A program made the translations under genes and the position numbers. The notes beneath the pieces were generated by a model. The model saw nothing but the letters and a program-made list of their open reading frames with translations. It was not told the origin of the DNA and searched no databases. Below, piece by piece: positions 2,870 through 63,290 of a DNA stretch of 64,000 bases. Position 1 is the stretch's first letter. The number at the start of each line of letters is the position of its first letter. Origin of the DNA: Schmidtea polychroa (taxonomy: Eukaryota); NCBI GenBank assembly GCA_044892525.1, contig CM097886.1, positions 103,230,001-103,294,000 on the forward strand, in the 5' to 3' direction.

Positions 2870-3235
2870 TTAAATTGCCTGAGATTATTAATAGCTGCTA
2901 ACATATCTTCTAAATTATTTTTTAAATCCGGTTCAAAGGTTAACGTCATAATTCCAAGTATTTATTTAATGAAATTTTCAAACAAATTTTCAGCGTTGAA
3001 TAAAATATTTTCAAAACCATTTATTAATATTTCGATATTTAAAATATATTTATTTAAAAATTATTTACTAATAAAAATTCTTTTAAAAAACTTGTTTAAT
3101 TTTTCAATTTAAAAATTTAAAAATTTCAATTTGAAAATAATTTTAAAAGTTATTTTAATAGTACTATTATTTATCATTTAACATTATCTTAATAAATCAT
3201 TTAAATATTTAATTCTCAGCTGAAAACACCTCACA
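2870..3235 (-). repeat. 3' LTR of the adjacent Gypsy remnant
   Basis: Starts with TG at 3235 directly after a polypurine tract (AAAGAAGAGGGA, 3236-3247). A homologous copy lies at 29285-29672. The distal boundary is approximate. Confidence 0.7.
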
Positions 3236-4330
3236 TCCCTCTTCTTTAAAAAATTTCTTTATCTTTTCAACATTTCTTTGAAACTATTTTCCCACTTTGG
3301 TCTTGTAGCAGATATCGGCGATCATGGATCTTCTGCATTATTCTGGATGGCTCTTCGTATCTTTCCTTGTTCTTGATTCTACTTTTACCAAAACCTCATC
3401 TCCAATATTGAATGATCTCTCTGCGTTGTTTCTCATTCATTCCTTTTGTGAAATCGGCGTTTTACTATGAAATTGTTCTCGAAATATTTTTCTTCCAAAT
3501 ATAACTTCTGCGGGACAGCACAATTGATTTCTGAAATGTTGCATTCATGGTAAATTCAATCTTTGGTATGATCTCTGCCCAATATTTTCTACTTTTTTCT
3601 TTTAATTATGCATTTATATAGTCTTGTATCGTCCTGAATTGACGTTCTATCACATCATTTGTATTATGGTGGTATGAAATTGAAAAGAATCGTGTAATTT
3701 CCATTGATTTTGTAAAATCTTTCATCGCCTTAAATTCAAATACTTTTGCACAATCCTGTTTAGGACAGCAGTCAGAGTGATATATCTGCTAAATTGATCA
3801 CTCGTTGCGACAATATATCTTTTCTTTCAGAATGTTTCCAATGTTCACTTTTTCCCATGGCTCCTCTGCTGTCAGCTTTATCGTCTCTTCCTTCATAATT
3901 GTTGTCACAACTTTAGTTCTTTGACATACCTCACATTGTCCAATTGTTTCCTGAACTGATTCTTTTATGTCTCCCATATCGTAATTGTCCGCTAAATATT
4001 TTGTCACCTTCTCTGCTTCTGTGTGTGATAGCAAAATATGCATACTCCTTATCATTTCTTGTCTTTTTCTCTAGGTATCCATATCTTACCCTCTATAGTT
4101 TTCACTACGTTGTCTACCAGTATAAATTTCCAAATTGAACCCTGTGCTATTTCCTTTTTTATTTGTTCTATTTCTGTATTATCTTTTTGCCACTTATAAT
4201 CTTCAACTTTTTCCATCGTGTTTATTCTTCGGGTTTTCATTCTTTCCACTTTCGTGTCTTCGTGTGTCAATAAATATTGTATGCATGTTCCACATGTACT
4301 CCTTGACAACATACTCCTTGAGCACAATAA
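3236..4330 (-). pseudogene. Ty3/Gypsy pol remnant (RNase H end, H2C2 zinc finger, integrase core and C-terminus)
   Basis: HILLSH...CEVCQRTK (H2C2); HNTNDVIERQFRTI (integrase core); RSFNIGDEVLVKV...RRYLLQDQSGKIV...EKIKKFFKEEGC running into the PPT. Multiple frameshifts. Confidence 0.85.
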
Positions 4331-17457: not shown

Positions 17458-18523
17458 TGCTAGGTTTTAGTTAATTTAAGTCGGTAGCCTCTGACTCCTC
17501 GTGTCCTTATAATCAAAACAATGAACTACCCAACGTATATTTGTATCACAAAATATTTTCTTTTCTCAACAATAAATAATCAAAGTTAAGTTTGACCGAT
17601 TCTCCGCTCGGCGTTGATGCTTTGACAAAAGATAATATTCACCTTTTATTTCCTTAGGTTCTCTTGACCGACGTTTTCCTTTTCTCTTGGATTTGATCCC
17701 TTTTCACCTTTTCGTATTCCTATTCTATATATATTTTCCCTAATCTCTTTAATTCGTTTTAACCTTTCGCCTAGTCTCGTTTCTTCTTACCCTAACTGAG
17801 CAAAATGCCCATTTGCTCTGACTTTCCCATTTCTTATATATTCTTCAAAATCGGGATCACAAATGGTTATTGCCGAGCCAATCTCTCACTTGACATTCGA
17901 CTCCACATATCTGCTTCGGCTATCACCCATAATGGTCCAACGAACAAAGATAATTAATGGCCCGTCCGACCTTTCTGCATGTCCTATCTTCTTCTTGGTC
18001 TTTTCCCATTAATCATTGTGTCACGATAATGGACCCAAATCTTCTTTCTATTTACTTTTCTCTTTGTTTACCCAGCTCGGGTTTCCTTCATCTCTCGGGT
18101 TCTCCATTCGCTCGGGTTTCCCATTCGCTCGGGTTTCCCATTCGCTCGGGTTTGTTATTAGCCAATTAATTAATTAATTAACGCTTTCTGTTTTAACACA
18201 TTTGAATGCTTTTCAACCCTTTCTAACCGTTTTCTGATAAATCCCTATTCATCATCTTGTTGACCATTAGCTAATCTATACCTGTCCCGTTTTCCCAATT
18301 CAATTTTGATGATTTTACAATTTATTGATTTTTCTCGGATTTACGGATTCTTGCCTTTCGCAACTGCTTTTGCCATTTCCTAATACTGCTTCCATCATAC
18401 TTTCCTTTACTATCAATTCTGTGCATGATCACGCTTTTATTTGTCTTTTTCCTTCACCTGCTTTTTATTTAAATTTTCAACCTAAATTTCATTTAAATTT
18501 ATTTTAATTTACTGACCTCAACA
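17458..18523 (-). mobile_element. Solo LTR, 1066 bp
   Basis: TGTTGAGG start at 18523, CA end at 17458, TSD ATGG on both sides. Full-length homolog of 33596-34654. Internal tandem (CTCGGGTTTCCCATTCG) units. Confidence 0.9.
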
Positions 18524-31389: not shown

Positions 31390-33134
31390 CAGGGATGGCG
31401 AACCTATGGCACGCGTGCCCAAAGTGGCACGCAGATAAATTTTCGCTGGCACGTATAATATTTTTCATTTTCATACATATGTAATGTACTGACTAATCCA
31501 AATGCATTTTTGATATTGAAAAAATTGTGAACTCAATTCAAATATTAGAAATGCATAAAAATATTAATATTAAAAAAATAAATGATATACGTTCAGCAGA
31601 GCTATTTTCTATATGTCTTGATGAAAGTACCGACGTAACATCTTCAGCTCGCTTGTCCATAATTGCTCGTTATGCTAAAGGAGAAAAAATAGTTGAGGAA
31701 TTGCTTTCACTAGTTTCCTTATCAGCAAAAACAACTGGGAAAGATATTAGTGATGCAGTTATAAAAACGTTTCAAATAGCTGAGATAGATACATCAACAA
31801 TAGTGTCAATTACAACTGATGGAGCTCCCTCAATGATAGGACGGCAAGCTGGTTTTGTATCTCTTTTTCAAGAACACGTTGGGCATCCAATTATTAATTT
31901 TCATTGTATAATTCATCAAGAATTTCTATGTGCGAAGTCTGGATTGGCAGCATTTGATGATATTTTAAGTATTGTTTCCAAAATAATAAATTTTATAGCA
32001 GCTCGAGCTTTGAATAAGCGGCAATTTCAGTTGCTTCTACAAGAGGTAGGTTCAAATTATCATGGATTGTTAATGTATAATCACGTACGCTGGCTTAGTA
32101 GAGGATTTGTGTTACAACGTTTTGTAGAATGTTTTGATGAAATTATCATGTTTCTTAATGATAAAAAAACCGAATTTCCTGAACTTTTTGATAATAACTG
32201 GATCACCAAATTAATGTTTTTAACGGATATTTCCAACCATTTAAATGAATTAAATATTAAATTGCAAGGTCCCGGAAAATCAATTGATGTAATGTTCGAT
32301 ATTATTGAAGGTTTTGAGTCCAAATTAGTAATATTTAAACGCGATATTGACAACAATAATTTTAAGTATTTTCCTTTGTTGAAAGATCACCTTCAAAAAT
32401 TTTCTATTCATGGAGTTTATGAAATTAATATAAATTTTTATAGCCAAGTTATAAGTGACATACAAGACAATGTTGCTAATAGATTTCAAGATTTCAAAAA
32501 ATTTCAACCATTAATTAACTTTATTAAATATCCAGACAAGTTTGATATGGAAACTGCTAAAATTGATCAATTAGACTGGTTACAGTTGGAGAATTTAGAA
32601 ATGCAGTTGGCAGAGTTTCAATCAAGTTCTATTTGGAAGCTGAAATTTATAGAGTTAAGGCAAGAAATAGAAAATAATGAAAAAAAAAGATTAAATGAAG
32701 AAGAATACGAAAACATGAATAATATGTTGTTGAAGACATGGTGTTCGCTCCCAGAAACATTTAATGCGATGAAGAAATTGTCTTTAGCTATTCTAACAAT
32801 ATTTTCATCAACGTATAGCTGTGAAAGTCTATTTTCGATTATGAATAATATAAAATCTGATGTACGAAACAGACTTACCGATGAATGTGGGGAGGCTTGT
32901 ATTTCATTAAAATTGTCAAACTATGATCCGGATATTGATGCATTATCGAGAAATATTCAGCGACAAAAATCCCATTAAAAACATGTCAGCATATTATAGA
33001 AATGAATCTATATATAATTTTTAAAAGCATGTATTTTCATTTAATAAAAATAATTTGTATTGGCACGCATGTATTTTCATTTTATAAAAATAATATTTAT
33101 TGGCACGCAGTCAAAAAAAGGTTCGCCATCCCTG
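31390..33134 (+). mobile_element. Young hAT transposon (GTF2IRD2/SPIN/Buster-like), 1745 bp, inserted just after the gag zinc knuckles
   Basis: Perfect 16-bp TIR CAGGGATGGCGAACCT / AGGTTCGCCATCCCTG and perfect 8-bp TSD ATGTAGAT. Gag-pol resumes in frame after removal (GVCRSSSRSNKPSIYVMDQE). Confidence 0.97.
31527..32978 (+). CDS. hAT transposase, 483-codon open frame lacking the N-terminal zinc finger
   Basis: LDESTD, TTDGAPSM, HCIIH, RWLSRG and STYSCESLFS motifs plus the dimerization tail. First ATG at 31551. Confidence 0.92.
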   Translation: MNSIQILEMHKNINIKKINDIRSAELFSICLDESTDVTSSARLSIIARYAKGEKIVEELLSLVSLSAKTTGKDISDAVIKTFQIAEIDTSTIVSITTDGAPSMIGRQAGFVSLFQEHVGHPIINFHCIIHQEFLCAKSGLAAFDDILSIVSKIINFIAARALNKRQFQLLLQEVGSNYHGLLMYNHVRWLSRGFVLQRFVECFDEIIMFLNDKKTEFPELFDNNWITKLMFLTDISNHLNELNIKLQGPGKSIDVMFDIIEGFESKLVIFKRDIDNNNFKYFPLLKDHLQKFSIHGVYEININFYSQVISDIQDNVANRFQDFKKFQPLINFIKYPDKFDMETAKIDQLDWLQLENLEMQLAEFQSSSIWKLKFIELRQEIENNEKKRLNEEEYENMNNMLLKTWCSLPETFNAMKKLSLAILTIFSSTYSCESLFSIMNNIKSDVRNRLTDECGEACISLKLSNYDPDIDALSRNIQRQKSH

Positions 33135-33595
33135 ATGTAGATCATCAAGTAGATCAAATAAACCGAGTATTTACGTTATGGATCAAGAAATCATAAACTC
33201 AGATATTGGAACAATGATTGCAATTAATTATTGTAGAAAGGAGCTAGTAAATTGCCAAATAAACTCGCACGAGGTGCTTATGAAGGTTGACACGGGTGTA
33301 GATGTATCCATATTATCGTCCAGGATGTGGGAGAATATAAGTAAACCTCAGTTAACCCATTCGCAAGTTAGATTGTCAGCATACAATGGTCATACGATGA
33401 TGTGCCGAGGTCAGTTTCTTGCTGATGTAGAAACTAAAACCAAGCGTCAGGTCATAACATTAACTGTTATTGAATCAGATAAAACATATGGTCTTTTAGG
33501 CAGAGATCTTTTAGAATCAGAAACCACCAATCACAATGTTACGATGAAGAGTACATTTCTTCCCACAATCAAAGGAATTCAAGCCACAATGATAC

Positions 33596-34654
33596 TGTTG
33601 AGGTCTGTAAATTAAAATTAAAAATTTAAATAAAATTTAGGATAATAATTCAAATAGAAAGTAAGCGAAGAAAAAAGACAAATAAAAGCGGGATCGCGCA
33701 CAGAATCAATAGTAAAGGAAAGTGTGATGAAAACAGTATTAGAAAATGCCAAAAGCAATTACGAAAGACGAGAATCCGGAAATCCGAGAAAAATCAATAA
33801 ATGGAAAAATCATCGAAATCGAATGGGAAAAACGGGACAGGTATAGATTAGCTAATGGTCAACAAGATGATGGCTAGAGATTTATCAGAAAATGATTAGG
33901 AAGGGTCGAAAAACATTCAAATGTATGAAAACAGAAAACGTTAATTAATTAATTAATTGGCTAATGGAAAACCCGAGCTAATGGGAAACCCGAGCCAATG
34001 GAGAACCCGAGAGATAAAGGAAACCCGAGCTGGGTAAACAAGAAGAAAGGCAAACAAAAGGAAGATTTGGGCCCATTAGCTTGACACAATGATTAATGGG
34101 AAAAGAGTAAGGAGAAGATAGCGCGCGTAGGAAGACCGGTAGGGCCATTAATTATCTGGATTCGTTGGACCATTATGGGTGACAGCCGAAGCAAACACGT
34201 AGGAGAAAATGTCAAACGAAAGATTGGCTCGGCAATAACCATTTGTCATCCTGATTTCGAGGAGTATATAAGCAAAGGGAAAATCAGAGAAAATCGGCAT
34301 TTTGCCTCAGGTAGGGTAAGAAGATTCGAGAATAGTCGAGAGGTAAAAACGAATTTAGGGAAGTAGGGAAAAGAAGAAATAGAATTAAGAATACGAAAAG
34401 GTGAAAAGGAATCAAACCAAACAGAAACCGAGGAAAACGAGAGTCAAGAGAATCGAAAGGACAAAAAGGTGAATATTATTTGTTTGCAAAGCAACAACGC
34501 CGAACGGAGAATCGTATAAAACTTTGATTGGTAATTGTAGCGTGATAATAAATTGTGAACCTGTTGTTTCAATATACGTTGGGTCGTTCATTGTTTTGAT
34601 TTAAAGAACACAGGAGTCAGAGAGAACCGACTTGAAATAATCCAAAACCCAACA
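33596..34654 (+). mobile_element. Solo LTR (1059 bp) inserted between protease and RT of the Gypsy
   Basis: TGTTGAGG...CCCAACA with TSD ATAC. Removal restores QATMIPIKEARNV. Confidence 0.92.
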
Positions 34655-44614: not shown

Positions 44615-45555
44615 CAGGGGTGAGCAAACTTTTTCTATAAAGGGCCACATAGAAAACTTGATTGTTATCGGGGGCCGCACATATATTTTGTCTACTAATT
44701 TACTTTAGTTACAATTTTTACAACTTATGAAAATATGAATTGATGAGAATAGTCATGTATTTGTCAGTTTATTTCACATTCCCACTCTATTACAAATGCA
44801 CATTATATTTTCAAATAGGAACTAAACGAATTGCTAATTTGGGAATACGATAATTATAATTAATTATAATTAATTATTCATAATTATTCCAACAAAAGTT
44901 TATTATTACACGTCATAATAATTATGAAGACAAAGAAACTTTATTTACATACAAGCCGACCACATTGTACAAATATAATTAATGAGAAGTATGTAACTGT
45001 TCACAATTTTGAATAATTTTCTTGAACTGTGGAACCAGTTTACTGGTTGTGATTCGCATAACTGCATTTAAATTGCAGTCAGTCAACATTGATCTGTTCT
45101 TAGACTTATTTATTTTCATATAAGAAATCGCTTGCTCACAAATGTATGTGGACCTAAATAGTGACAAAAGCTTGGCAGCAAATTGTTTTAGCTGCGGAAA
45201 TACTGCTGCTGGCAAACATCCATAAAACTCCAGCAGAAGAACTGACTTGAACTTTTCCTTCAGGTCATTTTCTGCTTGTAAGTCAAGCAGTTCTAACTGT
45301 ATATCCTCTGCTTTTTTGCGGAAAAGCAGTTTCAATGTTAACTAGTAATGACCAGTAATTAATAATATTCTGGAGCCATAAAATCGATTTAATATCCATA
45401 AATTCGAATCAAAGCAATAAGAAATACATTTCAAAAATATAGGCAAAACTGCAAGTCTAAGCTCCAAACAAAGAAAATTAATTTCGCATTGGATCGCCAC
45501 ATGTACATGCATACGGGCCGCATGCGGCCCGCGGGCCGTAGTTTGCCCACCCCTG
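44615..45555 (-). mobile_element. hAT (SPIN/OC1-like termini) deletion derivative, 941 bp
   Basis: TIR CAGGGGTG(A/G)GCAAACT at both ends and perfect TSD TCTTAGGT. ORF 44979-45335 is a dimerization domain (STYICEQAISYMKINKSKNRS). Confidence 0.95.
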
Positions 45556-48392: not shown

Positions 48393-48902
48393 CCATAATT
48401 TCATTTGACAAATATGGCCTATTAGACGCAAAAAGGTTAATGCTAAATAAATTAATATAGTATATATTATTAAATTAGTTAATTTAATCCATTCAACATT
48501 TCTTGTTAGAATTTTACCTTTTGACATTTTTATTTCTTAACCCCTGTCATGTCTTTTATTGGTTATTAATTCCAGGCCTTCATAACGATCGTTTTTATTA
48601 CACATCTTTTTTAATTAACCGAATATCACCATTTTTAATATTTCTGCGTATTTTCTTTTGAACAAACTTGATCTAATTCAACTTGATTTTATGCATCCAA
48701 CCATTCGTGATATACATTTTTACCAAAAACAATTTACACAGGAAATTTATTAATTGACTTTTGAAATGTTAAGTTCAGGATAAATTCAACATTTAGAAGC
48801 AATTCAATCTAATTTCTATGAAATTTATCTTTAAGTGAAATTTTAAGTGTCACAAATTGTACGTAATTGCATTTCTATTGGTCCATTAGCTGAGTCCATT
48901 AA

Positions 48903-51025
48903 CAGTGGCGTCGGATGGAAATTATCATAAGATGGAACCCCTCGTTTCAGAACATGAACAGTTTTGTGTTGTGACAAGGCAAGATGAAAAGGTTAAAGGA
49001 GATGTGCGCAAGCTAACCAAACAATGGTTCTACAAGATGATGCCAAATGACGAGAAAATACTGCGGTCATGGATGGTTTATTCACCCGTCAGTGAGAAAT
49101 TATACTGCTTTTGCTGTTAATGTTACAGAAACAACATCCAAATTTATTAAGTAATGGAAACTGAGCCCGAAAAAATGGAAAACATTGGCAGCGGGACTTA
49201 GAAGACACAAAACAATTGATGCTGAAAATATTGGTATTATGGTCAGGGAGAAGAAAAGTGGAGGGATATTTAGCACAGATTGCTGGATATCACATTGTTT
49301 CTTGCTAAGCAAAATGTGGCATTTTGTGGCTACAACGAAGATGAAGCTTCATTGAATAGAGGAAACTATCTTGAGATGGTTGAAATGCTTCATAAATATG
49401 ACCCAGTACTGAAAGAACACCTAATGAGACTAACGAGAAGTATATGTACAGTATAAGCATCCGTATCTTACCTTTCACCAGAAACGTAAAGTCAAATTAT
49501 AAATGTTCCGGCAACTCAAGTAAAGGAGATTCTTGTCAAGAATATAAAAACTGCGAGGTATTTTAGAATTATGTTCGATAGCACACCTGACATATCACAC
49601 ACTGACTAGATGTATGAGGTTATTAGATATGTGAAAATCCATAATGGGAAAGTTTAAGTGAAAGAAGTGTTTCTTGGATTTTTCCCTTTAAGTGGGATAA
49701 AAGCTGATGACCTCAGTTCTGACTTTCTAAGAAATCTAGAACGCGACGGACTTGGCATAATGATGTGCAGAGCTCAAGGCTACAATAATGCTACAACAAT
49801 GTCTGGAATCCGTGTAGGTGTTCAGGCCGTTTTGAAAAGAATAAGAAAGCGATTTTAAATGGGTGTGTGGAGCATTCACTGAACTTGTGTGGCCATTTTT
49901 TGGTACTCTTATGGGAATATTTTCATTCTTTGCTTATTCCACTCATCGATGGGATGTTTTGATTAAACACACTATGTGATCCTAGTGAAATTTTGGACAC
50001 AAGGGGAACAGCACAAGGTCTTTTAGATGCTTTCGGTGATTTCACGTTTATCTGCTACCTTTACCTCTGGCCTGATCTACTTGAGGAAGTCAATCTTATC
50101 AAGCAGTACCTGCATACTAAAGGCTTAACTCATGACAAAGTTGTGACTAAGTTAGAAACCTTAAGATTGTTTCTGTACGAGATACATTCACTTAGTTTAA
50201 AATGCAATTGAACAAGCACTTTCAAAATCAGACCAATAAGGAATTTCGATAGAAAGAAGATCAAGGTTCAAGAAGAGAATGGCGGAGGAACAACTGAGAG
50301 ACGCTGGACTCTATGCGAGAAGAAAACAGTAGGGAGATGATGGAATGTATTAATCGTTTTCATTCTGAACTCCAGATGCGATCAAGGAAGTAGTAGATAT
50401 GTTTGCGACTGTTCAACCCAAGAGTCTACTAGCGGCAAGTCAAGACTCTTTCTATGACGAATTAGCTGAAGATGAGCTTCTAAAAGAAATACCAAGGTTT
50501 AGAAGGCACCTGAAAGCAGCTGATATTGATCTCCACAAAATCATGGGCTGGTCATTGTTTAATGTTTTACAATTTATAGCTGAATGGGACTTCCTTGAAT
50601 GTCTCCCAATACTGTCTCTAAGCCATCAATTATTTCTCACAATTTGTGTGTCTGTGGCTTCATGTGAGCGGAGCTTTTCAAAACTAAAGCTGATGAAGAA
50701 TTATTTACCATCCATCATGGGACAGTCAAGACTTTTTTGATCTGGCTCTATTATCAATTGAAAGTGAGACCGTGAAGGACATAGACTTTGATGAAGTGAA
50801 TGACAGGTTTACAGCTCTGAAGACCAGGAAAGGAAAATTTTAAAGAATGTATTAATATCGATAACTTAACGTTGTTACAGTTCTTTAATACTTGTACATG
50901 CTGACCTTCAGTTAACTTATTTTTCGTATTTGTCATTTTGATACTGTTGACTTATTACATGCTAAATAAAAAAGAATAAATCTGTGATTGAAATCTGGGT
51001 GACACCAACCTTAGCGATGCCACTG
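48903..51025 (+). mobile_element. hAT Tip100/ZMYM1-like transposon, pseudogenized
   Basis: Ends CAGTGGCGTC / GATGCCACTG. Fragments WMVYSPVSEKLYCFCC, NRGNYLEMVEML, IMFDSTPDISH, CRAQGYNNATTMSG, SVASCERSFSKLKL. No matching TSD. Confidence 0.88.
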
Positions 51026-56934: not shown

Positions 56935-57510
56935 CTTGATAAAGAAGAAAATAGTTATTTTTACTAATAAATTATAACTATTGAAATTATTGTGAATTAT
57001 ACAATGAATTCCGGCAGTGTTTGGATAATTTAGGAAAAATTCGCAAATCTAAATAAAGCTATTGTCTTAATTAACTAAAATGTTTGGTTCATGATAAGTG
57101 TAATATAGAATTTAACATGGAGTCAATAAAGACCTCAAATTAATAAAATCAAAAAAATATAAATATAAGTAGATAGTACTGTGGACTCTAGCCCAACAGG
57201 AATCCTCGACTCTCAAACTTTTTTGGGCGAATGGTGGAGGTTGGGGTATCCTCCTACTTTTTAAAAAAAATTTGGACACCCCCCATATAAATTTTTGTTT
57301 AAATTATCGATTACATCATCGACTTTTTTATTTTTTATAAGAAAATTTTATATCAGTATACTTGAAATTAAATTCTCTATTAAATTGAGACTATGATGTA
57401 ATTAAAATCGTGAAATTTAATTTCTTAGTGTACCATTTTTGAATTTACACATCTTTTTAAACAACTTGAGATATTTTCACTCAAACAATATATAAATAGA
57501 AATTAAATCT

Positions 57511-57630
57511 CTACAAAATGACATCATTATTTATTTCAAATTCACAATCATAACACCTTAAACAATGTCTTTTTAACCAACTTTTACATACACACACATT
57601 TTTAACTTTTAAAAAATACAAATTATTCAT
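57511..57630 (-). CDS. Small Cys-rich ORF (39 aa) in the left repeat arm
   Basis: MNNLYFLKVKNVCVCKSWLKRHCLRCYDCEFEINNDVIL*; five Cys plus one His in 17 residues. Only one copy. Confidence 0.3.
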   Translation of the reverse strand: MNNLYFLKVKNVCVCKSWLKRHCLRCYDCEFEINNDVIL

Positions 57631-57727
57631 CTATACTTAAGAAAACCCATTCTGCTATTAAAAAATTATATTAAAAGACATTAAAAACTAAACATTTATT
57701 AAAATCCCAGAGAAATTCGAGCACTAT

Positions 57728-58075
57728 CTAATCTCCAAATCTCATCCACTTTATATCCCTGTCTGTATATTCAATTTCTTCAAATACATCATGAAAACGG
57801 GAATTTCGATTGTTGATGAATATATTTCCATTGCAACTTATATTCTTATTTATTTTCCCCAACACTTTATTTACTGCAACAACATCTTCTTTTGTTATAT
57901 GAGCTATGAAACTTGAATATTGCGACTTGATCAATTTGACTGCATTTGAGAATTTATATGCAATTTCATCTACCAAGAAATATATCTTATGGTTATGATA
58001 CATTTGTACTGGCTTCACATCATTCTTGACATGCTTAGTCTCGGTTATTTTCTTAATTGGGCTTGTTTCTTTCAA
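57728..58075 (-). CDS. Unknown ORF X of the Polinton-like element (copy 1)
   Basis: 115-codon frame conserved with copy 62304-62657, with many synonymous differences and frame-preserving indels. The start is TTG; the true 5' end is unresolved. Confidence 0.6.
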   Translation of the reverse strand: MKETSPIKKITETKHVKNDVKPVQMYHNHKIYFLVDEIAYKFSNAVKLIKSQYSSFIAHITKEDVVAVNKVLGKINKNISCNGNIFINNRNSRFHDVFEEIEYTDRDIKWMRFGD

Positions 58076-58441
58076 TAAATTAGAAAATGTTTTAAAAAAT
58101 AATGACTATCATGTCATTTCATCTGTCTTTTATACTTGTGATAACCAATCCAATTAATGCATTTGTATTGCAAACAGCATGGGGGTGTGAATGAATGACC
58201 TTTGTGTGAATTTTGTATGTGAATCATACATAGTTTGCAAATGTATTGCAGATGTATTGCAAATTAGTTAATTCTTTAATTAAAACGTGTACTAAAATAA
58301 TTAGTGTGATATTAAAAATAGTGAAGTAACATAAAAATACTATAACAACATAAAAATAGTGTACTATCACAAGTAACATTAACAAAATAAAAATTAAAAA
58401 ATGTTTTTTTCAACATTTTAAATATAGTAAAAACATATTTT

Positions 58442-60230
58442 TTATATCATAAAATTTATTAATTGATAACCATCACCCTCATTATTCGGAAAATGAGGAT
58501 GATATAACAAATCTTCATCTGCATCAACTATGGGCATCAACATTTCTTCATCAGAATCATCAGCCATAACCATACCACCCGCTCTATAATGACCATACGC
58601 ATAACTTTTATTTTTAAGTACCCAATTGCGCTTATCATCAACATTAGTTAGAACCCTCTTATTATTTTTAATACTAAAAAGTTGATGGTTTTTACTCGTT
58701 ATTCTAAATTGGGGTACCGTATAAATCGCATTATTATTATAACAATTCAGATACGACTAATGAGTTAGTCTAGTATCTTTCATTGTAACCCCCATCGCTT
58801 TCATACATCCCTTACTACCCTTCATGCTATAACATTTTGGTCTTAAAAATATCCATTCGTCATATCCAAAACCATTGCTCTCATCTTTAAATTTCCCTAT
58901 TACAGTCAAGGTTTTTGAATATAATGAATGTGTTGGCGCATAATTAGAGGTATCTAATAAATTATCCCTTAACATTGCTGGTAAAAAAGAATTTAATTTG
59001 CAATTTTTAATTTCCAAGAAAAATGAATCTGTATCCCCAGCAACTATATTAATTTTACAGTTAAATTCTGGACGATATTTTTCTAAATAAATGTACTGAC
59101 ATTGGTACATACGAAGTTTTGATAAATACAAAACTGATTGACCAATATAATTTGGTCTATTTAAACATATTAAATCTTTTCTTAATAGAACATATATTAA
59201 GTTGTAATCGATTTTAGTAGTCCTTTTGAAATTAGGTTTAGAACAATATGTTAAAATTTTTTGGGCTGAATTACAAAGTCTTAAATTAATTCGTTTCTTT
59301 AGGTTTTCGACAGTCTTACCGTATAGACTGTTGTTTAATAATTTAAAATAATTTTTATCTAGTGTGTTTGTTGATGGAGCCCTAAATTGTGTGTTAGCGT
59401 CTATATAATTTTCAAATATTGATGATTGTTCGAATTGTATAGCGCGATGAATTTTAATGACTTTTACCCCAATATTTAGATAAAGCTGGAGAAGTCTCCA
59501 ATGAACTACATAGTTTTTTTGGGATAGTGCGTAAGCATCAAGTTCTCCACTTTTGATCCTGGTACACGTATCTTTTCAGCGGCAACAGGGAAATCGTCAA
59601 GCTTATTATGAACCGATTCTGGGATTTCAAAATCGACTTCAACAGTATAACCGAATGTGAGTAATTCCAAGTCAACATTCATACAATTTTCCAAAATTTT
59701 ATTGAATTTTATTTCATCATTAATCCACTTAAAATTACTATCTGGAAGGTTTTGACTGAGAGCCCACCCATATAGGTTGTTAATATCTATATAGAGCAAC
59801 TCTGTGTTTTCATCTGATTTTACGTAATGTTTATTAACAAAAGTTAATACCCCTCGAATCCCACCTTCAAAGAAATTAAAAATCTCTATGTCTTGAATCA
59901 ACTCAATTGGATGATCTAAAGTCATGAGCGCAGAGTTTCTGTTGGAAAAAATCCGCAAGTAAAAAGATATCTAATTTTAGATATATTATCATGTAATTCA
60001 AAAGCGAATTACAATTATGTTCATCCCAAATGCGCTGAGCCATATCATATTCTACTTCAGTAACACCATCCAAAATAAGTGGTAATTGGGGAATTCCCTG
60101 AAGCACTTCAAGACTAGTAGCAAAATCATATGGGAATATACCCTTACCATTAACAATTACCACTCTAAATTCAGAATTAGTCAATGGCAATGTCGTTAAA
60201 GTATCTACCGCGTGTTTTTTTAAAAATCGT
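58442..60230 (-). pseudogene. Protein-primed family B DNA polymerase, 5'-truncated, with frameshifts and stops
   Basis: KGIFPYDF, YLKLDIFLLADFF (ExoIII), YIDINNLYGWAL (motif A), FKLLNNSLYGKTVEN (motif B), AGDTDSFF (motif C), LRPKCYS, DDKR...AYGHY. Confidence 0.95.
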
Positions 60231-60266
60231 TAATAAATTGAAAAATGAAAAATTATTTGAAAAAAT

Positions 60267-60732
60267 ATGATCAGTAATATAAATTATAAAGGTAGATTTC
60301 ATGTGTCTCATATGGAATTTCTAAAAGGTAAACCACAACAAATTGTTGACAGAAGTGGTAAACATTCAATAATATTTTTCAAGTCAGGTAAGTGTCGAAT
60401 AATGGGATGTAAAAAATCGATCAAAGTTGAAGATTTAAAATATGAAATCAAGGATTTACAAATTCAACCAATTACAGTTACTGCTGATATTGAATCAAAT
60501 GTTATTTTAAATGGTTTATCAAAGATTATATGATATGTATTCACGAACCAGAAATATTTCCGGAATTAAGATATATAAAATACAATCCAATGTGTGTTAA
60601 CATATTCAATAATGGTAAAGTAGTTATACTCGGTATAAAAAATTGGATTATCATTTACTTTTTTATAAAATTATTAAAGATATTAAATCAGTAATTGATG
60701 ACATGAAATTTTTAAAATTTTTATTAAACTAA
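60267..60732 (+). pseudogene. TATA-binding-protein-like gene of the Polinton-like element (1-2 frameshifts)
   Basis: Repeat 1: MISNINYKG...SIIFFKSGKCRIMGCK. Repeat 2, with a frameshift near 60520: LQIQPITVTADIESNVILNGLS...HEPEIFPELRYIKYNPMCVNIFNNGKVVILGIK. TBP for comparison: [21 protein letters not shown]...[34 protein letters not shown]. Confidence 0.8.
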
Positions 60733-60836
60733 AGTTACAATATGATTACATCAGAACTGCAACCCATGTATGCCTCACATACAAAGGTCAATGATTCACA
60801 AGCACATTTTGTTTGCAATACAAATGCATTAACTTG

Positions 60837-60860
60837 ATTGGTTATACACAAGTATAAAAG
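60837..60860 (+). promoter_or_regulatory. Inverted CCAAT (ATTGG) plus TATAAAAG promoter upstream of ORF X
   Basis: ATTGG 60837-60841 and TATAAAAG 60853-60860. The same TATAAAAG is at 62245-62252 (+) and 58127-58134 (-), each preceded by ATTGG. Confidence 0.55.
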
Positions 60861-61269
60861 ACAGATGAAATGACATGATAGTCATTATTTTTTAAAACAT
60901 TTTCTAATTCATTGAAAGAAACAAGCCCAATTAAGAAAATAACTGAAACGAAGCATGTCAAGAATGATGTGAAACCAGTACAAATGCATCATAACCATAA
61001 AATATATTTAATTTTAAATATATTGATATAAAAAGTTCTTATAAAAAATAAAAATTGATAACGTAATCGGCTATTTAAACAAAATTTAAATTATTGTGTA
61101 ATCGACAATTAAAGCAAAATTTTAAAAAATTTAAATGCGGGGATGTCCAAAAAACTTTTTTTAAAAGAGTAGGGCGATACCATTATATATACCCCCTCAT
61201 TCGCCTAAAAAAAAATAGTGATTATCATGTATAATTCAAATTTTATTTTGAAAAAAAACATAACATTAC

Positions 61270-61446
61270 CCGGGTAATACCAGTTTCTTCTTGAATAATT
61301 ATTTGAGTATTACGAGCAATTCTAGCCGAAAATTTCGTTGGCAGACCTAAAGCTTCATCAAATGCATTTGTATGTAAAGATTGAGTTCCACCAAAAACTG
61401 CAGCCATAGCTTCAATGGTAGTCCGCATTATATTATTATAAGGATC
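61270..61446 (-). CDS. MUT: MUT exon
   Basis: [59 protein letters not shown]. Confidence 0.97.
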
Positions 61447-61891
61447 CTAAGTATATTCAAGGTTAACATTTAAATTTAATTCAGATTTGTCCTTCCAAAT
61501 TAAAAATGAAAACTTATTAAATTTAATTATTAAATGTAAAATAATATATTAAAAAGAAATTTATAAAAAATGTAATAAGTGAAAAATAAGATTCATGATG
61601 ATAAATATCAGTGATAATTTAATAAAATATAAAAGAAATAAATCAACTTTAAATTAAAAATAAGAATTCACCTTTACTTGTGACATTAAAAAAATCAGTC
61701 AAATACAATTATTTTTGAGAATTTTGAAATCAAAAAATTAATTTTTTTTTCAATTCATTCATTTATATTCTACAAAAATATTTCTACAGGAAATATTTGG
61801 ATCAAGGTCAAAATCCCCCCGGTTTGTGAACAAGTTCAAAATCCCCCCCGTAAAAATATTAATAAAATATACAAAAAAAATAAAAAATAAA

Positions 61892-61963
<72 letters not shown>
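61892..61963. repeat. (AAT)n microsatellite, about 24 units
   Basis: Direct reading. Confidence 0.97.
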
Positions 61964-61965
<2 letters not shown>

Positions 61966-62051
61966 CCTTGCGACATGTTGAATATGACCAGTACCCTTGT
62001 GAGCATTACCCATAGGGGGACAAAATATTTTGTCGGATAGACTCAGAGTAT
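61964..62051 (+). repeat. Second copy of the 55651-55742 MITE core
   Basis: TTGCGACATGTTGA...TACCCATAGGGGGACAAAATATTTTGTCGGATA.ACTC.GAGTAT is shared. Confidence 0.8.
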
Positions 62052-62149: not shown

Positions 62150-63290
62150 CAAGGTCAAACAAAGGTCATTCAAACAAAGGTCATTCATTCACACCCCCAT
62201 GCTGTTTGCAATACAAATGCATTAATTGGATTGGTTATCACAAGTATAAAAGACAGATGAAATGACATGATAGTCATTATTTTTTAACACATTTTCTAAT
62301 TTATTGAAAGAAACAAGCCCAATTAAGAAAATAACTGAAACGAAGCATGTAAAGAATGATGTGAAACCAGTACAAATGTATCATAACCACAAGATATATT
62401 TCTTGGTAGATGAAATTCCATATAAATTCTCAAATGCAGTCAAATTGATCAAGTCGCAATATTCAAGTTTCATGGCTCATATAACAAAAGAAGATGTTGC
62501 AGTAAATAAAGTGTTGGAAAAAATCAATAAGAATATAAGTTCCAATGGAAATATATTCATCAACAATCGAAATTCTCGTTTTCATGATGCCTTAGAGGAA
62601 ATTGAATATGAAGAAGGTGTAAAGCTGGTTTGTAAATATTTCAATACAGGAATATAAAATGGATGAGATTTGGAGATTAGATAGTGCTCGAATTTCTCTG
62701 GAATTGTAATAATAAGTGGGTTCTTAATATTAATTTCGGTTTTATTTAAAATATTTAATTAACAATGGAAAACCAAATTCGCAAAATTTTACACAGGAAC
62801 CGCTAACAAACTCACAATGATGAATATGAAGTGGTAGATAAAATATATGGCTACTGGCGACGATTACTTCAAAAAGTTAGTTGAAGCAGATACTGTACAA
62901 GGGCTGGTGATTTTGTGAATGAAATTGGCGTGATCTAATCAACTGATACTTATCACCAGAAACATTGGAATGACAAAAAATGCTTGATAAATTGGTGATG
63001 CATGAATTGACAGAAATAAATCAAAAATAAATCACGGCCATGAGAGGTACTCTGCGCTACTTTTACTTAATAATAATGATACTTAATAATAATTGATCAC
63101 ATCAGCTAAAAAATTCTATCGCAGCTCCTTGAACCCAGATGAAACCATCACACGTTTATCACATGCTTAGAAATTGATGCGAAACATCTGAAATAAGTCA
63201 ATAAAATCATCTAAGTTATAAGGCGCCATAATATTTTTTAGATTTTATCATTAAACGACAGAGATCCTATTCCCCATACCTATGAATATT
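62150..63290 (+). mobile_element. Second fragment of the Polinton-like family, in the next MUT intron
   Basis: Contains the same promoter and ORF X, followed by different decayed coding-like sequence starting at ATG 62765. The right boundary is approximate. Confidence 0.7.
62304..62657 (+). CDS. Unknown ORF X (copy 2, with undeleted C-terminus)
   Basis: 117 codons. Carries the 36-nt segment (EEGVKLVCKYFN) that is missing from copy 1. Confidence 0.6.
   Translation: MKETSPIKKITETKHVKNDVKPVQMYHNHKIYFLVDEIPYKFSNAVKLIKSQYSSFMAHITKEDVAVNKVLEKINKNISSNGNIFINNRNSRFHDALEEIEYEEGVKLVCKYFNTGI

What the first reader, a model, noticed from the sequence alone, without database searches (positions are those of the whole stretch)
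60267..60732. A Polinton-like element encoding its own TATA-binding-protein-like factor
Seen: inside the inverted repeats and head-to-head with the pPolB is a frameshifted gene of about 155 codons with two TBP-type repeats (IFFKSGKCRIMGCK; IQPITVTAD...LNGL...EPEIFPEL...VNIFNNGKVVILGIK). Three of the four DNA-kinking Phe positions appear retained (IFF, EIFP, NIFN). The first repeat is shortened and lacks the YNPKRF segment. It has no introns and is far too diverged to be a recent copy of host TBP. Knowledge: TBP homologs occur in some giant DNA viruses, whereas core Polinton genes are pPolB, integrase, ATPase, protease and capsids. I am not aware of TBP as a described Polinton gene. Inference: a lineage of small protein-primed DNA viruses or transposons carrying a basal transcription factor to redirect or compete with host TFIID.
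Basis: partly seen in the sequence, partly recalled or inferred. Interest (0 to 1): 0.9.

Follow-up and report, generated by a model that had tools for sequence, protein, structure and literature searches.

The report
Dead TBP-like gene in Polinton remnant
A broken copy of a small TATA-binding-protein-like gene lies next to a broken protein-primed DNA polymerase gene in a decayed virus-like transposon remnant; it belongs to a widespread, barely described family of intact, compact TBP homologues carried by such elements.

Summary
Window 60267-60732 (+) is a TBP homologue: one reading-frame piece passes Pfam's TBP threshold, and the pieces cover 143 of 149 positions of the family profile. The gene is dead, with one clear frameshift and perhaps a second. 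It lies back to back with a pPolB pseudogene (two frameshifts, one stop, front quarter missing) inside a 3.9-kb remnant bounded by inverted repeats. No integrase, ATPase or capsid gene remains. The remnant lies about 90 nt from an exon of a host methylmalonyl-CoA mutase gene.

The gene is not a one-off. Public assemblies hold at least 318 clusters of intact proteins of about 150 aa. All 24 tested pass Pfam TBP. An AlphaFold model (pLDDT 96) matches only TBPs in the PDB (TM 0.66-0.80). The second lobe is complete. The first lobe keeps its strands but has no helices.

One intact relative lies in a block with A32-type ATPase, integrase plus chromodomain, and the pPolB closest to the window's. Others lie next to an ATPase or a Bcl-2 gene. 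Function as a basal transcription factor is inferred, not shown.

Starrett et al. 2021 already mark "TBP" on maps of such viruses, so the idea is not wholly new. This compact family has not been described.

The parts
60267..60732 (+). TBP-like gene, pseudogene. At least one frameshift, possibly a second; no other stop inside the pieces.
   Evidence: Pfam TBP 26.2 and 14.6 bits for two pieces searched apart. PDB TBPs E 1.3e-5. Family profile 98 and 63 bits, 143 of 149 positions covered. 30 of 32 covered conserved positions kept. It is the only copy in the window.
58571..60208 (-). Remnant of a protein-primed family B DNA polymerase gene, pseudogene. Two frameshifts and one in-frame stop. About the first quarter is missing by comparison with an 802-aa relative.
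   Evidence: PF03175 30.1 bits. tblastn with the pPolB of L001: best E 1.5e-160, 55% identity over 554 aligned residues. More than 200 metagenomic relatives. The DTDS polymerase motif is visible.
57245..58211 (.). Left inverted-repeat arm of the remnant.
   Evidence: Matches 60778-61181 and 62168-62712 in inverted orientation at 73-90% identity.
57728..58075 (-). Open frame of 115 codons inside the left arm. It is homologous to the 123-aa ORF next to the TBP-like gene in relative L001.
   Evidence: tblastn E 6.6e-7. No Pfam family.
60778..61181 (.). Right inverted-repeat arm of the remnant (middle copy). It lacks about 580 nt that the left arm has. It begins 45 nt after the TBP-like gene.
62168..62728 (.). 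A further copy of the repeat arm, in the same orientation as the middle copy. It lies on the far side of a host exon: either a separate fragment or a duplication.
   Evidence: 89% identical to the left arm and 93% to the middle arm. It carries a 117-codon frame (62304-62657, +) like the one in the left arm; its match to the L001 ORF is split over two frames.
61270..61446 (-). Neighbour, not part of the element: an exon of a host methylmalonyl-CoA mutase gene with AG and GT splice signals.
   Evidence: PF01642 102 bits. The best PDB match is human mitochondrial MMUT, residues 354-411, E 5e-26. Splice signals were read.

Best explanation
Shown:
- The window holds an old, gutted copy of a Polinton/adintovirus-like element, about 57245-61181, lying about 90 nt from an exon of a host methylmalonyl-CoA mutase gene, probably in its intron.
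- Only a truncated pPolB pseudogene, a TBP-like pseudogene and the inverted-repeat arms survive. Nothing here can be functional.
- The TBP-like gene belongs to a large family of intact proteins of about 150 aa carried by such elements.
- These proteins have a complete second TBP lobe, including the stirrup motif E-P-E-x-F-P. The first lobe is cut down: it keeps the strands of the saddle but neither helix.

Inferred: in live relatives the protein acts as a minimal virus-encoded TBP. Its concave sheet would sit on AT-rich promoter DNA of the element. The conserved second-lobe stirrup is the surface that binds TFIIB in cellular TBP (established knowledge of the TBP-TFIIB-DNA complex). It would recruit the host's TFIIB and RNA polymerase II. 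The first-lobe helices are the docking sites of several TBP regulators and partners. Their loss would free the protein from host control through TFIID-type partners. This would let a small nuclear DNA virus start its own transcription.
For: TBP homology:
- Pfam and PDB sequence hits for the window pieces.
- 24 of 24 relatives pass Pfam TBP.
- The family profile matches PDB TBPs at E 9e-20.
- The AlphaFold model of P0001 has pLDDT 95.9. The top 44 Foldseek PDB matches are all TBPs, TM 0.66-0.80, aligned over both lobes.
- The first lobe is a degenerate repeat of the second (hhalign E 4.9e-6).

Constraint on the family:
- Four Phe positions are kept in 90-100% of 118 sequences, and the stirrup motif in 96-100%.
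- Every longer member holds the same single 149-position core.

Link to the element:
- L001 carries TBP-like, A32 ATPase, rve plus chromodomain and pPolB in one block.
- Its pPolB is 55% identical to the window's.
- Its ORF next to the TBP-like gene recurs inside the window's repeat arms.
- In L002 the neighbour is the start of a P-loop ATPase; in L003 it is a Bcl-2 gene.
- Contig lengths 20066 and 32242 occur in both the TBP-like and the pPolB hit lists.
- Clusters recur on up to 16 contigs of 10-16 kb.

Decay in the window. No integrase, ATPase or other L001 gene was found by tblastn.
Against: - No binding, expression or structural experiment exists for any member.
- The first-lobe stirrup, which binds TFIIA in cellular TBP, is replaced by a different loop. 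The Phe there is out of register.
- Three nearly invariant cysteines hint at a feature that cellular TBPs were not seen to share.
- Gene order around the gene is not conserved in the four contexts seen.
- No TATA-type box stands out upstream of the window copy, and in DNA this AT-rich such boxes mean little.
- Context is known for only three relatives, two of them on contigs of about 1.3-1.5 kb.
- Capsid and protease genes of L001 were not recognised.
Confidence: 0.6

Rival explanations
1. The protein has the TBP fold but works as a DNA-bending or end-binding architectural protein of the element, in replication, integration or packaging. It does not nucleate a transcription complex.
For: The gene lies directly beside a repeat arm in the window, and beside the homologue of the arm-borne ORF in L001. 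The first lobe has lost both helices. Its stirrup is remodelled. Conserved cysteines are absent from the TBP alignments seen.
Against: The most conserved stretch of the family is the second-lobe stirrup, which matches cellular and archaeal TBPs residue for residue. That surface has no known role other than binding TFIIB-type factors. Foldseek finds no non-TBP fold above TM 0.44.
Confidence: 0.2
2. The protein is a decoy. It occupies host TATA boxes or titrates TFIIB to shut down or skew host transcription, rather than driving the element's own promoters.
For: The structural evidence is the same as for the main explanation. Loss of the first-lobe helices could make complexes that are unproductive. 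Related elements carry other host-manipulating genes such as Bcl-2 (Starrett et al. 2021).
Against: Nothing separates this from the main explanation with the data in hand. A decoy would not need all four Phe positions and the whole saddle to be kept so strictly.
Confidence: 0.15
3. It is a decayed copy of the host's own TBP or of a TBP-related factor that landed by chance beside a pPolB fragment.
For: The region is a graveyard of transposon fragments.
Against: Identity to cellular TBPs is only 22-26%. Relatives lie in element gene blocks.
Confidence: 0.03

Closest known systems
Cellular and archaeal TATA-binding protein (Pfam PF00352)
   Same: The saddle fold aligns over both lobes (TM 0.66-0.80). 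The second repeat passes Pfam's threshold. The second-lobe stirrup motif and both second-lobe Phe are identical in place.
   Different: The core is about 150 aa against about 180. The first lobe has no helix H1 or H2 and has a remodelled stirrup. Identity is only 22-26%. Three conserved Cys are present. The gene is intronless and carried by a mobile virus-like element.
'TBP' genes drawn on maps of midsize eukaryotic linear dsDNA (MELD) viruses with adintovirus-like PolB (Starrett et al. 2021, PMC8502044, Fig. 5 legend)
   Same: A TBP homologue in a small pPolB-bearing virus-like genome. A Bcl-2 homologue, as those authors report for adintoviruses, lies next to a relative here.
   Different: The paper only labels the gene. 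It gives no sequence, architecture or distribution in the text held. Whether it is the same family could not be checked, because fetching those genomes was left out.
TBP-like proteins of giant viruses (Nucleocytoviricota), for example those of Heterosigma akashiwo virus, mimivirus relatives and the asfarvirus B263R group
   Same: A virus-encoded TBP fold. These are the best matches in the viral structure library.
   Different: They are much longer (190-500 aa) and share at most 17% identity. They serve cytoplasmic viral RNA polymerases, whereas these small elements encode no RNA polymerase in the contexts seen.
Herpesvirus late-gene TBP mimics (UL87/BcRF1 group)
   Same: A nuclear DNA virus supplies its own TBP-fold factor to nucleate host RNA polymerase II (established knowledge). 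They give weak structural hits (E 1e-4 to 1e-3).
   Different: They are large proteins with a cryptic fold and no sequence similarity. The family here still passes the sequence profile of true TBP.

Membership tests
TBP (PF00352) | Sequence match to the TBP repeat profile above the curated threshold | tested here: met
   One window piece scores 26.2 bits against the 22.9 threshold. 24 of 24 intact relatives pass, best E 1e-19. The family profile against PDB TBPs gives E 9e-20.
TBP (PF00352) | Two tandem repeats that form a ten-stranded saddle, each capped by two helices | tested here: inconclusive
   There are two lobes and both align to TBP. The first lobe is homologous to the second (hhalign E 4.9e-6). 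However, the first lobe has no helices in the model.
TBP (PF00352) | Two pairs of DNA-kinking phenylalanines | tested here: inconclusive
   Three are in register and kept in 99-100% of 118 sequences. The fourth position is not Phe, but a Phe kept in 90% of sequences lies four residues upstream. The window copy keeps all four.
TBP (PF00352) | Binds and bends TATA DNA and recruits TFIIB | not testable with these tools
   Only the conserved stirrup motif speaks for it.
Polinton/Maverick | Protein-primed family B DNA polymerase | tested here: met
   Present as a pseudogene: PF03175 30.1 bits, 55% identical to the L001 pPolB.
Polinton/Maverick | Retrovirus-type (rve) integrase | tested here: not met
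   tblastn with the L001 integrase finds nothing in the window. The integrase is present in relative L001 (rve 51.9 bits plus chromodomain). The window unit is therefore a remnant, not a member in working order.
Polinton/Maverick | Terminal inverted repeats | tested here: met
   Arms 57245-58211 and 60778-61181, 73-90% identical.
Polinton/Maverick | 6-bp target-site duplication | tested here: inconclusive
   The flanks beyond the outermost matching bases share no duplication. The true ends are uncertain after decay.
Polinton/Maverick | Packaging ATPase, maturation protease, major and minor jelly-roll capsid proteins | tested here: not met
   None is in the window. In L001 the A32-type ATPase is present (26.1 bits). 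The 410-aa ORF and its neighbours gave no Pfam or PDB sequence hit, so capsid and protease remain unrecognised there.
Adintoviridae (proposed) | Animal host, adenovirus-like virion proteins, accessory genes such as Bcl-2 | tested here: inconclusive
   A Bcl-2 homologue lies next to the gene in L003 (39.4 bits against 31.4). The window's host carries an MMUT exon closest to the human protein.

The most novel reading that the evidence does not exclude
A widespread lineage of small (about 10-16 kb) pPolB-plus-integrase viruses or transposons of eukaryotes carries a minimal TBP. It has one full lobe and one helix-less lobe, and it nucleates host RNA polymerase II complexes on the element's promoters without TFIID. 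These would be the smallest known viruses with their own basal transcription factor, and the protein a natural minimal version of the TBP saddle.
Probability: 0.4. Interest if true: 0.7.

Novelty: new variant of a known kind. Interest (0 to 1): 0.5.

Why it matters
Virus-encoded TBPs are known from giant viruses, which bring their own RNA polymerase, and as cryptic mimics in herpesviruses. A true, sequence-recognisable TBP in elements of only 10-16 kb that depend on the host polymerase would show that even small integrating DNA viruses take over the first step of promoter recognition.

The family is also a natural experiment on TBP itself. It shows which parts of the saddle can be lost (both first-lobe helices) and which cannot (the strands, the Phe positions, the TFIIB-side stirrup).

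For genome annotation, the 149-position core is a handy marker. It flags decayed Polinton-like remnants, such as this one, that have lost integrase and capsid genes.

Tried and rejected
- Ciliate or other genetic codes. The intact 493-codon hAT frame and the MMUT exon read in the standard code, and table 6 only inflates random frames.
- Other copies of the gene, or other Polinton genes, in the window: none.
- tRNA and Rfam scans: nothing.
- The divergent neighbour in L002 as a pPolB start: no similarity. It is a P-loop ATPase start.
- Terminal repeats in L001: none within the 16 kb held.
- A target-site duplication at the remnant's ends: not seen.
- Capsid recognition in L001 by Pfam and PDB sequence search: no hits.
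- A TATA box upstream of the gene: present in L001 and L002, absent in the window and L003, and not meaningful at 26-31% GC.
- Naming the host through sample accessions, cluster names or papers: nothing.
- Further literature on TBP in Polintons or Mavericks: only Starrett et al. 2021.
- The last reading-frame piece as proof of a second frameshift: too weak.
- A phylogeny with cellular TBPs: not made, because no cellular TBP sequence came back as a session protein.

Full report
WHAT IS IN THE WINDOW

The window is AT-rich (about 26% GC). It reads in the standard code and is packed with transposon debris: hAT, an aspartyl protease, and bits of LTR-element integrase. It contains several N runs, which I left alone.

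At 60267-60732 on the plus strand lies a reading frame of about 155 codons, split over reading-frame pieces. I searched each piece on its own and never joined them.
- One piece passes Pfam's TBP model (26.2 bits, threshold 22.9). Another matches the same model weakly at the equivalent strand hairpin.
- Against PDB sequences the stronger piece finds TBPs only.
- Against a profile of 118 intact relatives the pieces score 98 and 63 bits, cover 143 of 149 positions, and keep 30 of the 32 covered positions that are at least 85% conserved.

The gene is therefore a real TBP homologue and a fairly young pseudogene. One frameshift is certain. A second near the 3' end is only weakly supported.

THE NEIGHBOURHOOD

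About 60 nt away, on the other strand, starts a pPolB remnant at 58571-60208 (PF03175, 30.1 bits). I measured it against the pPolB of a relative (L001). It is 55% identical over 554 residues, carries two frameshifts and one in-frame stop, and lacks roughly the first quarter of the 802-aa protein.

The pair is bounded by inverted repeats, 57245-58211 and 60778-61181. A third copy of the arm lies at 62168-62728. Between the middle and right copies lies an exon of a methylmalonyl-CoA mutase gene, about 61270-61446 on the minus strand. It scores 102 bits on PF01642, has AG and GT splice signals, and its best PDB match is the human mitochondrial enzyme. The remnant proper is therefore about 57245-61181 (3.9 kb), some 90 nt from that exon. 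The right copy is a separate fragment or a duplication.

No integrase, ATPase or other element gene is left in the window. The arms are 7-11% diverged from each other over their main matches, so the insertion is old.

THE FAMILY

The first piece alone retrieved intact proteins of 130-153 aa and 36 clusters at 50% identity. A profile of 24 of them retrieved 318 clusters at 90% identity. All come from metagenome or read-archive assemblies. None is named by NCBI or UniRef; JGI's pipeline calls some 'TATA-box binding protein'.
- All 24 aligned members pass Pfam TBP. The profile hits PDB TBPs at E 9e-20.
- An AlphaFold model of the closest intact relative (P0001, 71% identical to the window's first piece) has pLDDT 95.9. 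Its 44 best PDB matches are all TBPs, aligned over both lobes, with TM 0.66-0.80 and 22-26% identity.
- In the viral structure library the best matches are giant-virus TBPs at no more than 17% identity.

The second lobe is a full TBP repeat. The first lobe keeps the strands but shows neither helix. It is still detectably a repeat of the second (hhalign E 4.9e-6).

In that register the second Phe of each lobe and the first Phe of the second lobe are kept in 99-100% of 118 sequences. The remaining position is not Phe, but a Phe kept in 90% of sequences lies four residues upstream. The second-lobe stirrup motif is kept in 96-100%. Members longer than 185 aa hold the same single core plus tails. 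Three nearly invariant cysteines are unexplained.

LINK TO POLINTON-LIKE ELEMENTS

- P0005 lies on a 22-kb contig (L001). There it opens a block of close-packed, co-oriented genes: an A32-type ATPase (26.1 bits), an rve integrase (51.9 bits) with a chromodomain, and a 410-aa ORF. The block converges on a pPolB. That pPolB is the one that matches the window at E 1.5e-160.
- The 123-aa ORF next to the TBP-like gene in L001 has homologues inside the window's repeat arms.
- The left 5 kb of L001 is tandem repeats and an LTR-element fragment, so that element is integrated.
- On two short contigs the neighbour is the start of a P-loop ATPase (L002) or a Bcl-2 homologue (L003, 39.4 bits against 31.4).
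- Contig lengths 20066 and 32242 appear in both the TBP-like and the pPolB hit lists. Family clusters recur on up to 16 contigs of 10-16 kb. Both facts are indirect signs of the same linkage.

Gene order is not conserved. Given the truncated pPolB, the head-to-head junction in the window looks like a deletion scar.

HOW IT LIKELY WORKS

Shown: the fold, the conservation, and the linkage to the element.

Inferred: the protein is a minimal virus-encoded TBP. Its saddle would bind AT-rich promoter DNA and its conserved second-lobe stirrup would recruit TFIIB and RNA polymerase II. Loss of the first-lobe helices would uncouple it from host partners that dock there. These roles of the TBP surfaces are established knowledge, not tested here.

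Rivals are an architectural role at the genome ends, a decoy against host transcription, and a stray host pseudogene (very unlikely). In the window itself nothing works.

WHAT IS KNOWN

Full-text searches found one prior mention. Starrett et al. [quoted passage not shown] They also report Bcl-2 homologues in adintoviruses. No paper in the library analyses such a gene.

I therefore class this as a new variant of a known kind: a virus-encoded TBP in a compact architecture that has not been described.

STEPS LEFT OUT, AND SLIPS

- Fetching relatives. After the Bcl-2 neighbour, the adintovirus paper and the MMUT exon pointed to an animal host, I made no further look-ups or scans that would fetch contigs of relatives. 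Three contigs (L001-L003) had been fetched before that. I only read, translated and compared them as they stand, and I printed 110 nt upstream of the gene from each.
- The frameshifts.
- Not done.

Noticed in passing
window 61270-61446 (-): An exon of a methylmalonyl-CoA mutase gene with AG/GT splice signals, closest in the PDB to human mitochondrial MMUT residues 354-411. It lies between two copies of the element's repeat arm, about 90 nt from the remnant, and hints that the host is an animal.
   Followed up: partly
window 57728-58075 (-) and 62304-62657 (+); L001 5271-5642 (-): The repeat arms carry an open frame of 115-117 codons. It is homologous to the 123-aa ORF that sits beside the TBP-like gene in L001. 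There is no Pfam family and the function is unknown.
   Followed up: partly
L003 263-688 (+): A Bcl-2 family gene (39.4 bits, threshold 31.4) lies 220 nt upstream of the TBP-like gene on a 1.5-kb contig. Adintoviruses are reported to carry this kind of accessory gene.
   Followed up: partly
family alignment, P0001 positions 47, 52 and 113: Three cysteines are kept in 86-100% of 118 family members. They are not seen in the TBP alignments returned by the tools. They could be a metal site or a disulphide; the coordinates of the model could not be inspected.
   Followed up: no
(protein tables): Family clusters recur on many contigs of 10-16 kb from ENA, Logan, JGI, MGnify and a soil catalogue. This could be the full size of the live element. 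Two contig lengths are shared between the TBP-like and pPolB hit lists.
   Followed up: no
window 31497-32975 (+); also 50399-50740 (+) and 44979-45335 (-): An intact 493-codon frame with a hAT dimerisation domain, and two shorter hAT fragments. This may be a young hAT transposon family.
   Followed up: no
window 17597-18500 and 33622-34514: Inverted repeats of about 900 nt, 82-87% identical and 15-17 kb apart. They enclose the hAT frame and an aspartyl-protease frame (33178-33615). Their nature was not examined.
   Followed up: no
window 3233-3677 (-) and 48483-48859 (-); L001 979-1494: Fragments of an LTR-element integrase C-terminus, similar (E 2e-23) to an ORF in the host flank of L001. 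This is a weak hint that L001 comes from a related host.
   Followed up: no
window 61826-62013: A long trinucleotide microsatellite gives poly-Leu, poly-Asn and poly-Tyr frames between the exon and the right repeat copy.
   Followed up: no
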